Assembly (NCBI RefSeq): GCF_000002075.1
Contig: NW_004797323.1
Location: forward strand, 1,428,170-1,492,169
DNA from: Aplysia californica
Lineage: Eukaryota
Length of the DNA stretch: 64,000 nt
Direction of reading: 5' to 3'
Below, piece after piece: positions 30,789 to 33,932 of this stretch. Both the position numbers and the translations under genes were made by a program. The notes beneath the pieces were generated by a model. It searched no databases. It was not told the DNA's origin and saw only the letters and a program-made list of their open reading frames with translations. Position 1 is the stretch's first letter. Each line of letters starts with the position of its first letter.

Positions 30789-31024
30789 TAGAAGAAAGAG
30801 CTTTATCTTGTGCTTTCAAATCTTTCCCCAAAATATGTGAGAAACAGAAAGGATCACTTCTTTTTGTCACAGAAAATTGCAAATTATGCAATTCCGAGGT
30901 TTTTCAGCAAGCCTGTCTATGAAATATTTAGAGAAACTTGTTTTGCTATTTTATTGTATACACCAATAAACATAAACCTATTAAAGTTAATCTTGGCACA
31001 GTTTAAAATTAATGACTTTCTCTA

Positions 31025-33106
31025 CACGGCTGTTCCACTCAGGATCACTTAGTTGCCGGCCGACCTGACCTCTGAGACAAGGTCACGCCCTGGTCACGCT
31101 ACTTGCGGGCGTTCGGCCTCGCGGTCAGTGGCTCCCCCGCGATGTTATGTTTTGTACACATAAAGCAACACCAGTTTTTATGAAAGCCGAGAAAGTCAAT
31201 GAAACAACAACCAAATGATCACATGAAGACGAAGGTGATGTTTACGACAGTATAATTTTTATCACGGAGAAGTAAAAGAAAGTGTTGTTTAAAAGAGGGG
31301 GCTTTCATCATAGATTGGTTATTACAAACAAACATGTTTTTTTAAAAATAATTAAAAATAAACGGACCCACGGATTTTTACAGTCTTCATTGTCAGCTCA
31401 CAGTCAGACTTTGAACTTTCAAACATACTTACGTTTATGAGGTAAGACCAAAAAGTCTTGTTGCTATTGTTGATTAATGCACACAGTCTTGTCAATGAGT
31501 GGGAAAACAGTTGAGTCCAGCCAACGCACGAGTATATTTCACATGAGATTGAAGACCGTTCTTTACACCTTCACAGCTAAATTGATGTTACTATAGTAAA
31601 TAATTTGATAAACATACTACTATAAAACTGTTTAGGAACTAAGGTTTTATCTGTGAATAGTCTGAATCGTCTAAATCGTCTTGTTTACTTTTTCATGCGT
31701 TTTTCCACTGGCTCATGGAGTGTGGCCTTTAAATCTGAAGATGTCTGTAGTCGGTGTGCTTCCAACACAGCTTTAAGTTATTTTTAAAAAAAATTTTTAT
31801 GCCTACTGTTCTCTTTTCTACTCTGGCGATTGTGCCATGAGCATACACCCCCCCCCCCCCCCCCCTTGTTCGCCCAGCATGCCAAGGCCAAATCCGCAGG
31901 CTTTCATAAATGGCAAGCAATGGCGCTCTAGCATGTGTATTTTTGGTGTCACTGTGTGAGGAAATACTTTGCGGAATAGTTTTAGATATGAATCGATGTC
32001 TGCGCTAATGGAAATGTGTTCTGACGGGAGTACAGAAGAAGTATCTGGGGTGGGGGTATACGTTATGCTCGCGGGGGATGGACAAGGCAACTCGTGTCCT
32101 TCCGTAAGCAAAGGAATGCGCTCTTTACTGCACCCTTTGCTAAGTTTAACACAGCGAGCACACACAGGGCACTCGTTAATGCATATGCTTGCATCGTAAG
32201 CGGACCAAACATAGGCACTGTCTTCTACACATTAATTCTGTGCGGCCTTCAAAGCCGTATTTGTAATTTGTTTCCGTAGTGTGTATATTCGCGAGCCACA
32301 TTTCCTGCACAGAGTGTTGGAATGCTTGTCAGCTGTGTCGTTGTCAATGTTCAGTCTATAATCTTGTAATAAGTCAGACTTAAAGTTTTCACACAAAAAT
32401 TGACGCTGCTTAGAAACTTTAGTTTTTAAAGTTCTTCCACTACAAGTACGACACAACTTGTTTAAATTCTCAAAGTGGAAGTTATAAGAGTGTTCCATCT
32501 TTGATGTTAAAAGGCTCTATTATTATAAACACACAAGAAAGTCAGACGGCAAGTTCCCGCTTCACAGAGTTTTTCTTTGCACTGAGCGTTGCACTAGACT
32601 AGTCACATAAAGTGCGCTAGTTCATGTAAATTTAGCTCGGACCCTGAGATTTTTCACCACAATTGAGAGAATAGATTTACAAAAAGAAATATGAAGGTTA
32701 AAACAAAAATTGTCGGTTCGAATTATTAAAATCCGCTTTTAAATCCAAAAAAATAAATAACACAGAGCTGTACAACAGTGGTAGTATATAAGTATCCCAA
32801 GGGAATATAAAACAAGATAGAAACTGGTTTCAAACTGCCGGTTATAGAGGAGATGCTGAGCTTTTATTTGATATATAACACTCCTAGGTTTACGGGATGG
32901 AGAAAGGGAGTACTAAGCTGTAAATTCCAGTTAATTTCTTGAAATTGTACCCTTTCCGTACGGAGCGGTCAGATCTAGGGATAGGCCGGTGGAAGTGGCG
33001 TAACGCATCGAGATTTATTACCTTCCGCAAGAGGTCACAGGGGTCAGAAGGGTCAGATGGGCTACAACTAAGTGCGCCTCTCAGAGAATGAAACTGAACA
33101 GCCGTG
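31025..33106 (-). mobile_element. Internally deleted Chapaev / N-RAG-TP-like (CMC/Transib-related) DNA transposon
   Basis: Termini CACGGCTGTTC...GAACAGCCGTG, flanks TCTA/CCTA (imperfect 4-bp TSD); internal transposase relic. Confidence 0.85.
31685..32498 (-). pseudogene. Chapaev-type transposase relic with RAG1-N-terminal-like Zn domain; catalytic core deleted
   Basis: HFENLNKLCRTC...LNIDND...HSNTLCRKC...W...CPVC fused to TPKIHMLERH...GLGMLGEQG; in-frame TAA at 32232-32234, frameshifts at the G-run and near 31790. Confidence 0.85.
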
Positions 33107-33932
33107 CCTAGTGATCTATAAACTTTCTTATCTTCTGACTCTATAAAGAGTTGTAGTACAGGTTAGAAAAGCTGCAGGAAATCACATATCATATCATTAA
33201 GGTACCCCGATAAGCATGCACATTATCATGGTCATAAGGCAATTGCAGTAATTTTTTTCAGGTTACTAGTTACTGGCATGATAAGAATGCTTGTTCATCT
33301 TTATATTATATTCTCAATATAGCAGGGTATCGATTTGTAAAAAAACAACCAAAAAACAATTTTTGAGATATTTCTACTTTTGCTCAAGTTGCAAGTTCGA
33401 TGTAGGTCAGAATTATTCTTTAAAATGTTCACAAACAGCAAAAAATGACAAAGGCATTTGTGTTATGACAGTGACGATGCTGCATAAGATATAAAAGATA
33501 GCAGAGTTGATGAGGGCATAGACTCAATCTGTATTCCGAATAATGCAAATCTTTGTATATAAAAAATCTAACATAAGCAGCAGCCTAAAGAAAAGAGAAA
33601 TACAGAGGTAAGAAGAAAACAGAAGACCATGAATCCCATATAAGGTAGAAAAAAAATCTGGTATGCAATGTACAAAAATGAATTTTTGTTTGTATCTTTC
33701 TGATCAGAGACTGTCTCTAACTTCCATTCAAAGCCCCTTTGTTCTTTCCTCTTATTCGCACACACATACACACTGATAAACACATAATAATAATAATTTT
33801 AAAAAATAGTTGGCATTTGTATAGCTCAAATTTCTGGCAAGTTCCATGCGCTTTACAATGTATATTATTACCTCAATATAGATTTGCAGAGCTAACACAC
33901 ACAAAAAAAAGTCCACACATGTAGTTAATATA

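What the first reader, a model, noticed from the sequence alone, without database searches (positions are those of the whole stretch)
31025..33106. RAG1-related transposon with bipartite ends and 10/21-bp spacers, a 12/23-like asymmetry
Seen: left end is CACGGCTGTTC (31025-35), a 10-nt spacer, then CACTTAGTTG (31046-55). Right end (reverse complement) is CACGGCTGTTC (33106-096), a 21-nt spacer, then CACTTAGTTG (33074-65). Both boxes are identical between the ends, the spacers share little sequence, and their lengths differ by exactly 11 bp. Known: V(D)J RSSs are CAC-starting heptamer/nonamer pairs with 12 and 23 spacers (also an 11-bp difference), and Transib/Chapaev/N-RAG-TP elements are RAG1 relatives with CAC termini. 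Inference: this family may use a one-turn/two-turn end-pairing rule, either ancestral to or convergent with the 12/23 rule.
Basis: partly seen in the sequence, partly recalled or inferred. Interest (0 to 1): 0.85.

Follow-up and report, generated by a model that had tools for sequence, protein, structure and literature searches.

The report
Lopsided ends of RAG1-like transposon
A broken copy of a known kind of jumping gene (Chapaev, a cousin of the antibody-gene enzyme RAG1) has two-part end signals whose second part lies about one DNA turn further in at one end than at the other; this layout holds in 13 related families, so the origin of RAG1's 12/23 rule can now be tested at the bench.

Summary
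Both boxes sit at the stated coordinates with 10- and 21-nt spacers. The 11-nt difference is not a private deletion: 24 distinct family ends have the 10-nt spacer, 28 have the 21-nt spacer and one has 9.

The element (31025-33106) is a 2.08-kb internally deleted, non-autonomous Chapaev-type DNA transposon with a 4-bp target duplication. The genome looks like the sea slug Aplysia californica, judged from assembly size as I remember it. An intact relative encodes a 937-aa transposase. Its N-terminal zinc finger matches the RAG1 NZD, and its predicted core superposes on RAG1 (Z about 25).

The new result is comparative. In 13 families (transposases 31-57% identical), only CACRGCK at positions 1-7 and YTTAGTT are conserved. 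TTAGTT starts at position 24-25 at the gene-distal end and 34-36 at the gene-proximal end, always in that polarity. A 14th family, read only from genome-wide pattern lists, has 24/33. Genome-wide, ends fall into these two spacing classes, with nothing above background in between.

A 12/23-like pairing rule remains untested; I put it near 0.35. This scan noted the same architecture before on another piece of this genome (s1-728366). I found no paper describing it.

The parts
31025..33106 (-). Whole element: 2,082-bp internally deleted, non-autonomous Chapaev-type DNA transposon. The transposase remnant reads on the minus strand.
   Evidence: At least 66 genomic matches at 78-94% identity. A 4,029-bp near-full-length copy of the same family lies at G000:C93:1502978-1507006 (L032), with ORFs of 622 and 291 aa. 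16 of 18 family copies with both ends have perfect 4-bp target duplications (read).
31021..31024 (.). Target-site duplication, left copy (TCTA).
   Evidence: It matches the right copy CCTA at 3 of 4 positions. Other copies show perfect 4-bp duplications.
31025..31035 (+). Terminal box at the gene-distal (3') end, CACGGCTGTTC. The first 7 nt (CACGGCT) are the part conserved between families (CACRGCK).
31036..31045 (+). Short spacer, 10 nt (CACTCAGGAT).
   Evidence: 24 distinct ends with 10 nt.
31046..31055 (+). Box 2 at the 3' end, CACTTAGTTG. The conserved core TTAGTT lies at 31049-31054, which is position 25 from the terminus.
31066..31127 (.). Subterminal TGACC/GGTCA repeats (starting at 31066, 31081, 31092, 31123).
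   Evidence: This is the most enriched subterminal 5-mer across 10 families: 45 observed against 4.9 +/- 2.2 in shuffles.
31818..32165 (-). Remnant ORF (115 aa) that spans the internal deletion. It joins the region just after the zinc finger to the C-terminal HMLERHC...GLGMLGEQG motif (zinc histidines and catalytic Glu region). The segment that carries both catalytic Asp residues in the relatives is missing.
   Evidence: The deletion junction lies at about 32031-32034 (query 1-1010 and 1007-2082 against the C93 copy).
32232..32498 (-). Remnant ORF (88 aa) encoding the N-terminal Chapa / RAG1-NZD-like zinc finger.
   Evidence: Weak Pfam hits to zf-AD and RAG1_imp_bd. The family profile hits RAG1 NZD 21wb_A at E 2.5e-7.
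32967..33055 (.). Subterminal GGTCA repeats (starting at 32967, 33033, 33042, 33051; the last three are 9 nt apart).
33065..33074 (-). Box 2 at the gene-proximal (5') end, CACTTAGTTG on the minus strand. The core lies at 33066-33071, which is position 36 from the terminus.
33075..33095 (-). Long spacer, 21 nt.
   Evidence: 28 distinct ends with 21 nt.
33096..33106 (-). Terminal box at the 5' end, CACGGCTGTTC on the minus strand.
33107..33110 (.). Target-site duplication, right copy (CCTA).

Best explanation
Shown: the window holds a dead, internally deleted copy of a Chapaev-superfamily cut-and-paste DNA transposon. It can only have moved in trans, using the transposase of full-length relatives. 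That transposase combines a RAG1-NZD-like zinc finger with a RAG1/Transib-fold DDE core, in which candidate catalytic residues (two Asp, one Glu) and a Cys2/His2 zinc site are conserved.

Shown: each end is a bipartite signal. A heptamer-like terminus CACRGCK is followed by an unconserved spacer and then YTTAGTT, and TGACC repeats lie further in. Spacer length comes in two classes that differ by 9-11 bp, about one helical turn. The long class is always at the end upstream of the transposase gene and the short class at the other end.

Inferred: one part of the transposase cuts at the CAC terminus, and another part (or a cofactor) binds YTTAGTT on the same face of the helix. The one-turn offset then makes the two ends structurally different in the synaptic complex. 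The element would thereby tell its 5' end from its 3' end and would favour, or perhaps require, pairing one short with one long end. The P element (9/21) and RAG (12/23) work this way. I put conserved functional asymmetry at about 0.85 and a strict heterotypic pairing rule at about 0.35.
For: Family identity:
- 4-bp target duplications: 16 of 18 copies of this family; ATTC, GATC, TACA, CGCT, AATG and AGAA in other families.
- An empty-site joint that skips exactly 4,109 bp, with 4 shared letters, in 3 runs.
- DUF1280 at E 1.9e-14 and RAG1 NZD at E 2.5e-7.
- RAG1 core by Foldseek at E 1.9e-15 and by VIA-align at Z 24-25, rmsd 3.0-3.9 over about 450 residues; BbRAGL Z 22.8; HzTransib Z 22.7; next family, P element transposase, Z 11.
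- Conserved D480, D551, C570, C573, H859, H864 and E881/E885.

Asymmetry:
- 24 ends with a 10-nt and 28 with a 21-nt spacer in this family; the exact genome pattern gives only 10 or 21.
- In 13 families with transposases 31-57% identical, TTAGTT starts at 24-25 at the 3' end and 34-36 at the 5' end, always in that polarity.
- Only positions 1-7 and YTTAGTT are conserved between families.
- Genome-wide counts for CACRGCK-N-YTTAGTT: gaps 15-16, 627 against control 73; gaps 25-27, 763 against 147; gaps 17-24, 338 against 389.
- In the listed parts I counted by eye about 43 inward-facing short+long pairs and no short+short or long+long pair.
Against: - No experiment shows that the transposase binds YTTAGTT or that pairing is heterotypic.
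- Non-autonomous copies inherit one short and one long end by descent, so the lack of homotypic pairs is weak evidence.
- The stretch between zinc finger and core (KTGGQP plus basic helices) gave no nonamer-binding-domain match when folded alone.
- The offset is 9-11 bp rather than one fixed number.
- One RING-bearing relative (L083) may have ends with a different offset (22/26); this is unvalidated.
- Target duplications could not be confirmed on the five short metagenome-contig families (L080-82, L084, L085, L087) or for family F3 (L067).
- Deep sampling comes from one genome. The other assemblies are unnamed, so the taxonomic breadth is unknown.
Confidence: 0.75

Rival explanations
1. The asymmetry marks the ends as different, for ordered cleavage, orientation of the synaptic complex, or regulation tied to the promoter-proximal end. 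It imposes no 12/23-type requirement, so same-type pairs would still work, only less well. This is what is reported for ProtoRAG 27/31.
For: Polarity is strictly tied to the direction of the transposase gene in 13 of 13 families. ProtoRAG prefers but does not strictly require asymmetric pairs (PMC8289069). Long spacers carry A/T tracts near positions 11-15 and 22-26 that short spacers lack, which could serve bending or a host factor.
Against: Nothing here separates a preference from a rule. The offset of almost exactly one helical turn points to a geometric constraint in a single complex, not to a mere label.
Confidence: 0.4
2. The 10/21 difference is a neutral indel inherited from a common ancestor and has no function; the ends are simply imperfect inverted repeats.
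For: Within this family both spacers contain CACTC, so the ends align as one repeat with an 11-nt gap. In families F2 and F9 the long spacer looks like a roughly 10-nt duplication (CCGAAA...CCGAAA).
Against: Spacer sequences have turned over completely between families, yet lengths stay at 24-25 and 33-36 with fixed polarity. Genome-wide there is no excess at intermediate spacings. An unconstrained 15-27-nt stretch would have drifted in length over divergence to 31-57% protein identity.
Confidence: 0.07
3. YTTAGTT is not a transposase site. It is the site of a host architectural or silencing factor, and the TGACC subterminal repeats are the true internal transposase-binding sites, as in CACTA and hAT elements.
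For: TGACC/GGTCA is the most enriched subterminal 5-mer, 45 against 4.9 expected. No DNA-binding domain could be assigned to YTTAGTT.
Against: YTTAGTT is the only internal motif kept at a fixed distance and orientation at both ends of all 13 families. The number and position of TGACC repeats vary, and three 5' ends have none within 160 nt.
Confidence: 0.15

Closest known systems
Chapaev superfamily transposons (CMC-Chapaev; 'N-RAG-TP' of Aplysia californica, Panchin & Moroz 2008; Chapa domain, Kapitonov & Koonin 2015, PMC4411706)
   Same: N-terminal Chapa/NZD zinc finger, DUF1280 DDE core, CAC termini, a 2-4-bp target duplication (4 bp here), and a single ORF with no RAG2-like gene.
   Different: No difference in kind: this is a member. 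The open literature I could search does not mention the bipartite, one-turn-asymmetric end structure. The original Repbase Reports could not be read.
V(D)J recombination signal sequences (heptamer CACAGTG, 12 or 23-bp spacer, nonamer) read by RAG1/RAG2
   Same: A CAC-initiated heptamer-like terminus (CACAGCG matches the RSS heptamer at 6 of 7 positions). A second conserved box follows an unconserved spacer. There are two spacer classes about one helical turn apart, and the enzyme shares the RAG1 core fold and N-terminal zinc finger.
   Different: Box 2 is YTTAGTT, not ACAAAAACC. Spacers are 15-16 and 24-27 nt by conserved cores (10 and 21 by this family's longer boxes). The target duplication is 4 bp, not 5. 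There is no RAG2 partner. No nonamer-binding domain could be shown, and a pairing rule is untested.
ProtoRAG (amphioxus) TIRs: TR1, a 27- or 31-bp spacer, TR5 (PMC8289069)
   Same: Bipartite ends with a CAC-initiated element and a distal conserved element, spacers that differ between the 5' and 3' ends, and a RAG1-fold transposase.
   Different: The ProtoRAG offset is 4 bp, not a helical turn. ProtoRAG has a RAG2L gene and a 5-bp target duplication. Its asymmetry has been tested functionally; here it has not.
[quoted passage not shown]
   Same: Nearly the same numbers (9/21 against 10/21) and the same logic: an identical terminal repeat with an internal binding site one turn further in at one end.
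   Different: The transposase lineage is unrelated (THAP plus a GTP-binding RNase H fold; Z only 11 to this model). The P element has 8-bp target duplications and no CAC heptamer.
Transib transposons (HzTransib)
   Same: Same core fold (Z 22.7) and CAC termini.
   Different: Transib has 5-bp target duplications and no Chapa zinc finger. From memory, its two TIRs are described as alike; I did not check this here.

Membership tests
Chapaev superfamily (CMC-Chapaev) DNA transposon | Transposase with an N-terminal Chapa (RAG1-NZD-like) zinc finger | tested here: met
   The profile of 17 transposases hits RAG1 NZD 21wb_A at E 2.5e-7 and full-length RAG1 6oem at E 1.1e-4 through residues 99-296. The window's 88-aa remnant has the same C..C/H..C pattern.
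Chapaev superfamily (CMC-Chapaev) DNA transposon | DDE catalytic core of the DUF1280 / RAG1-Transib-like type | tested here: met
   PF06918 at E 1.9e-14. RAG1 at Z 24-25. D480, D551 and E881/E885 conserved.
Chapaev superfamily (CMC-Chapaev) DNA transposon | Short target-site duplication (2-4 bp in CMC; 4 bp for Chapaev proper, from memory) | tested here: met
   16 of 18 copies of this family have perfect 4-bp duplications. Six other families show 4-bp duplications. The empty-site joint has 4 shared letters. The CMC range of 2-4 bp is stated in bioRxiv 10.64898/2026.08.26.747230.
Chapaev superfamily (CMC-Chapaev) DNA transposon | Termini that begin 5'-CAC | tested here: met
   All 26 ends of the 13 families begin CAC.
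RAG / RAG-like (RAGL, ProtoRAG) transposon | Paired RAG1-like and RAG2-like genes, and a 5-bp target duplication | tested here: not met
   There is a single ORF of at least 200 aa in the intact 4.1-kb element. The target duplication is 4 bp.
Transib superfamily in the strict sense | 5-bp target duplication; a transposase made of the core only, without the Chapa domain | tested here: not met
   The duplication is 4 bp and the Chapa domain is present. The core fold is shared.
RSS-type recombination signal obeying a 12/23 rule | Heptamer CACAGTG at the cleavage site | tested here: inconclusive
   The consensus is CACRGCK. CACAGCG matches at 6 of 7 positions and this window's CACGGCT at 4 of 7.
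RSS-type recombination signal obeying a 12/23 rule | A/T-rich nonamer ACAAAAACC bound by a nonamer-binding domain | tested here: not met
   Box 2 is YTTAGTT. The candidate DNA-binding segment (residues 240-372) gave no structural match.
RSS-type recombination signal obeying a 12/23 rule | Two spacer classes that differ by about one helical turn | tested here: met
   The offset is 10-11 bp in the 13 fully characterised families and 9 bp in F10, read from lists. Spacing is bimodal genome-wide.
RSS-type recombination signal obeying a 12/23 rule | Synapsis and cleavage require one signal of each class | not testable with these tools
   Indirect only: about 43 short+long inward-facing pairs and no same-type pair in the listed parts.

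The most novel reading that the evidence does not exclude
Chapaev transposases obey a true heterotypic (short/long) end-pairing rule that shares its mechanism and ancestry with the RAG 12/23 rule. Bipartite signals offset by one turn would then predate the split of Chapaev, Transib and RAG lineages, and would not be a vertebrate or RAG-specific invention.
Probability: 0.2. Interest if true: 0.9.

Novelty: new variant of a known kind. Interest (0 to 1): 0.68.

Why it matters
How and when the bipartite, asymmetric 12/23 signal of V(D)J recombination arose is an open question. Current accounts hold that invertebrate RAG-like transposases rely mainly on the terminal 15-17 bp and are 'relatively insensitive to TIR asymmetry' (PMC7204232). 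ProtoRAG shows only a 27/31 difference (PMC8289069).

Here a sister lineage shares both the RAG1 core fold and RAG1's N-terminal zinc finger. It keeps a heptamer-like terminus and a second box in two spacing classes one helical turn apart, with fixed polarity, across families whose spacers have otherwise diverged completely. That outcome has two readings: deep ancestry of one-turn asymmetry in the RAG/Transib/Chapaev group, or a striking convergence (as in the P element) that says something general about how DDE transposases tell left from right.

The question is directly testable. A naturally intact 937-aa transposase gene exists with two 99.3% identical copies, so no reconstruction is needed.

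Tried and rejected
- Long copy. The 8-kb copy at C526 is not autonomous. It is the same deleted element with a LINE (endonuclease, reverse transcriptase, RNase H) inserted.
- Single-sequence PDB search. Searching the 937-aa transposase alone found nothing; only the profile reached RAG1.
- NBD-like domain. I suspected that KTGGQP plus basic helices (residues 240-372) corresponds to the RAG1 nonamer-binding domain (GGRPR, from memory). Folded alone it gave pLDDT 70 and pTM 0.33, with no Foldseek match at E below 1. A few whole-model alignments reach RAG1 401-429, but at rmsd 6-11. Inconclusive; not claimed.
- Ends not found. None could be identified for the crinoid gene P0019 (L074, with introns; possibly domesticated), for the P0006 contigs (L077-79), or for the 5' end of family F7 (L069).
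- Target duplications do not match for the five families on short metagenome contigs (L080-82, L084, L085, L087; flanks may be chimeric) or for F3 (L067).
- Genome letters. The pair count there is manual and covers only the first 100 rows of each list.
- Reads. No end-to-end (circle) joints appeared for the intact family. All runs were contigs, so rare forms are lost and expression cannot be judged.
- Literature. I found no paper on Chapaev end asymmetry. Repbase Reports 2007/2008 and Panchin & Moroz 2008 were not readable.

Full report
**1. The observation**

The window reads exactly as reported. CACGGCTGTTC lies at 31025-31035 (+) and at 33096-33106 (-). CACTTAGTTG lies at 31046-31055 (+) and at 33065-33074 (-). 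The spacers are 10 and 21 nt. The flanks are TCTA and CCTA, a 3-of-4 match for a 4-bp target duplication.

Both spacers contain CACTC. The ends can therefore also be read as one imperfect inverted repeat of about 45 bp with an 11-nt indel.

**2. Not a private deletion**

The genome has 927,310,431 bases in 4,332 contigs. From memory this matches Aplysia californica AplCal3.0; I did not verify it. It holds at least 66 matches to the element.

- In the fetched copies, 28 distinct ends have the 21-nt spacer, 24 have the 10-nt spacer and one degenerate end has 9.
- An exact genome-wide search that allowed any spacer from 4 to 30 nt found 33 sites, against 0 for the reversed control. Twenty-one had 21 nt, twelve had 10 nt and none had another length.
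- 16 of 18 copies with both ends have perfect 4-bp target duplications (read).

**3. What the element is**

The minus strand carries two ORF remnants. One is an 88-aa zinc finger (32232-32498). The other is a 115-aa piece (31818-32165) ending in HMLERHC...GLGMLGEQG.

A 4,029-bp copy of the same family lies at C93 (L032). It has ORFs of 622 and 291 aa separated by one frameshift. Compared with it, the window copy lacks about 1.9 kb, with the junction near 32031-32034. In the relatives that region carries both catalytic Asp residues. The window copy is therefore non-autonomous.

An 8-kb copy at C526 is the same deleted element with a LINE inserted.

A second, distant family has an apparently intact 937-aa ORF (L065:3990-6803). 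Its two copies are 99.3% identical.

**4. Relationship to RAG1**

- Pfam finds DUF1280 at E 1.9e-14.
- The AlphaFold2 model has mean pLDDT 77.5, mostly above 85-90 from residue 370 to 925.
- Foldseek ranks RAG1 first (E 1.9e-15), then BbRAGL and HzTransib. The next family, Hermes, is at E 0.02.
- VIA-align gives Z 24-25 at rmsd 3.0-3.9 over about 450 residues. Model residues 365-931 align with RAG1 458-1008. BbRAGL scores 22.8, HzTransib 22.7 and P element transposase 11.
- D480, D551, C570, C573, H859, H864 and E881/E885 are conserved.

The literature fits this. The 'Chapa domain' links Chapaev transposases to the RAG1 N-terminus, and Aplysia Chapaevs are known (PMC4411706; bioRxiv 10.64898/2026.01.24.700457). 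N-RAG-TP was described in Aplysia (PMC8355894).

By its 4-bp target duplication, CAC termini, Chapa domain and single ORF, the element belongs to the Chapaev superfamily. It is not a Transib or RAGL element.

**5. The comparative result**

I located both ends in 13 families:

- Six in this genome: F1 (window and L032), F2 (L065), F3 (L067), F4 (L068), F5 (L070) and F6 (L071).
- Seven from other public assemblies and marine metagenomes: L072, L075, L076, L080-82, L084, L085 and L087.

Their transposases are 31-57% identical to F2.

Counting from the terminal C, the TTAGTT core starts at 24 or 25 at the end downstream of the transposase gene. It starts at 34, 35 or 36 at the upstream end. This holds in all 13 families, always with the same polarity.

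Between families only CAC.GC(G/T) at positions 1-7 and (T/C)TTAGTT are conserved. The spacers and everything beyond show no conservation.

Boundaries are backed by matching 4-bp duplications in F2, F4, F6, L072, L075 and L076. For F2 there is also an empty-site joint that skips exactly 4,109 bp, with 4 letters shared, in three sequencing runs. The flank there is itself a high-copy repeat, so the empty site may be paralogous rather than allelic.

**6. Genome-wide spacing**

The generic pattern CACRGCK-N-YTTAGTT gives these counts:

| Gap (nt) | Matches | Reversed control |
|---|---|---|
| 15-16 | 627 | 73 |
| 25-27 | 763 | 147 |
| 17-24 | 338 | 389 |

Spacing is therefore bimodal. The only visible family in the middle range sits at its upper edge, at gap 24 (F10, 24/33, offset 9).

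Part of the long-class count comes from an unrelated-looking repeat (see item 7 of section 9).

In the listed rows for contigs C1-C44 I counted by eye about 43 inward-facing short+long pairs. They range from a 270-bp MITE to 4-kb elements. I saw no short+short or long+long pair.

**7. Other cis features**

- TGACC/GGTCA is the most enriched subterminal 5-mer: 45 observed against 4.9 +/- 2.2 in shuffles. All eight copies in the window element lie within about 140 bp of the ends.
- Long spacers tend to carry A/T runs near positions 11-15 and 22-26: 11 of 13 have a run of four or more, against 3 of 13 short spacers. This hints at intrinsic bending or an architectural factor. I did not pursue it.

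**8. Mechanism and comparison with known systems**

Shown:

- The enzyme has the RAG1 fold.
- The signal is bipartite.
- There are two spacing classes about one turn apart, and their polarity is fixed.

Inferred:

- The transposase reads both boxes on one face of the helix.
- The extra turn makes the synaptic complex asymmetric.
- That asymmetry favours or requires one end of each class.

The same logic is documented for three systems. The P element has 9/21 spacing that is 'reminiscent of the 12 and 23 bp RSS' (PMC7776569). ProtoRAG has 27/31 spacing and prefers asymmetric pairs (PMC8289069). RAG itself uses 12/23.

I could not show a nonamer-binding-like domain. Nothing here tests pairing. 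Inheritance of one short and one long end by descent explains the absence of same-type pairs equally well.

A RING-bearing relative (L083) may have a different offset, 22/26. This rests on one contig and is unvalidated.

**9. Novelty**

The element itself is an ordinary member of a known superfamily. The conserved one-turn asymmetry of Chapaev ends is not mentioned in any paper I could search. The Repbase Reports that first described Chapaev could not be read.

This scan had already noted 'RSS-like asymmetric bipartite ends (16/26 spacers)' on another piece of this genome (s1-728366). My families F2-F4 and F6 show exactly that spacing, so the present finding is a second sighting of the same phenomenon. 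Here it is generalised to 13 families and to the whole genome.

Noticed in passing
L086:1-60 (Tara metagenome scaffold, family of P0007): The contig begins with the last 39 nt of the element's 3' end fused precisely to its 5' end (...GGGCGCCGTG|CACGGCGCCC...). This is a heptamer-to-heptamer, 'signal-joint-like' junction. It could come from an excised circle, a head-to-tail tandem or an assembly artefact.
   Followed up: partly
L065:3268-7372 and L066:3604-7706 (G000:C880 and C379): Two 99.3% identical copies of a 4.1-kb Chapaev element carry an uninterrupted 937-aa transposase ORF. The C379 copy lacks the first 8 nt of its 5' end. Contigs from several sequencing runs of two organisms hold more than 80% of the element. 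Internal-deletion joints (5842>6854, 4238>6477) appear in the reads. The element may be recently active.
   Followed up: partly
L031:2238-7434 (G000:C526): A non-LTR retrotransposon is inserted into a copy of the window's family. It has a zinc-knuckle ORF1, an endonuclease/reverse transcriptase ORF split in two, and an RNase H.
   Followed up: no
Genome-wide lists: A non-autonomous family of about 1.56 kb related to F6 is very abundant. Its ends are CACGGCGCACCGGCAGTGGAATTTTAGTT and CACGGCGTCACTTTTCGCCCGATTCTGTTACTTTTAGTT, and it makes up nearly half of the listed short ends. A 270-bp MITE with one short and one long end lies at G000:C7:1588895-1589166.
   Followed up: no
Long (5') spacers of 13 families: A/T-rich runs recur near positions 11-15 and 22-26 of the long spacer and are mostly absent from short spacers. 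Position 4 of the terminus is A in 7 of 13 5' ends but in only 2 of 13 3' ends.
   Followed up: partly
L083:377-3597 (NCBI GCA_013332675.1, RING-bearing relative P0017): The candidate ends, CACCTTGATTTTCAAG... and CACATGATTTTCAAG..., have TTAGG at positions 22 (5') and 26 (3'). The offset and polarity differ from the 13 families. There is no matching target duplication and only a single contig.
   Followed up: no
Genome-wide list: An unrelated-looking repeat, CACAGCTAAGACATCTGTTTAGCACGTGCCAAGCTTAGTT, recurs many times and inflates the long-class count. I did not determine what it is.
   Followed up: no
window:31848-31866: A run of about 18 C residues lies inside the element. It falls in the codons that follow GEQG in the transposase remnant. 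The near-full-length copy (L032) reads GEQGGEMLHA at that point.
   Followed up: no
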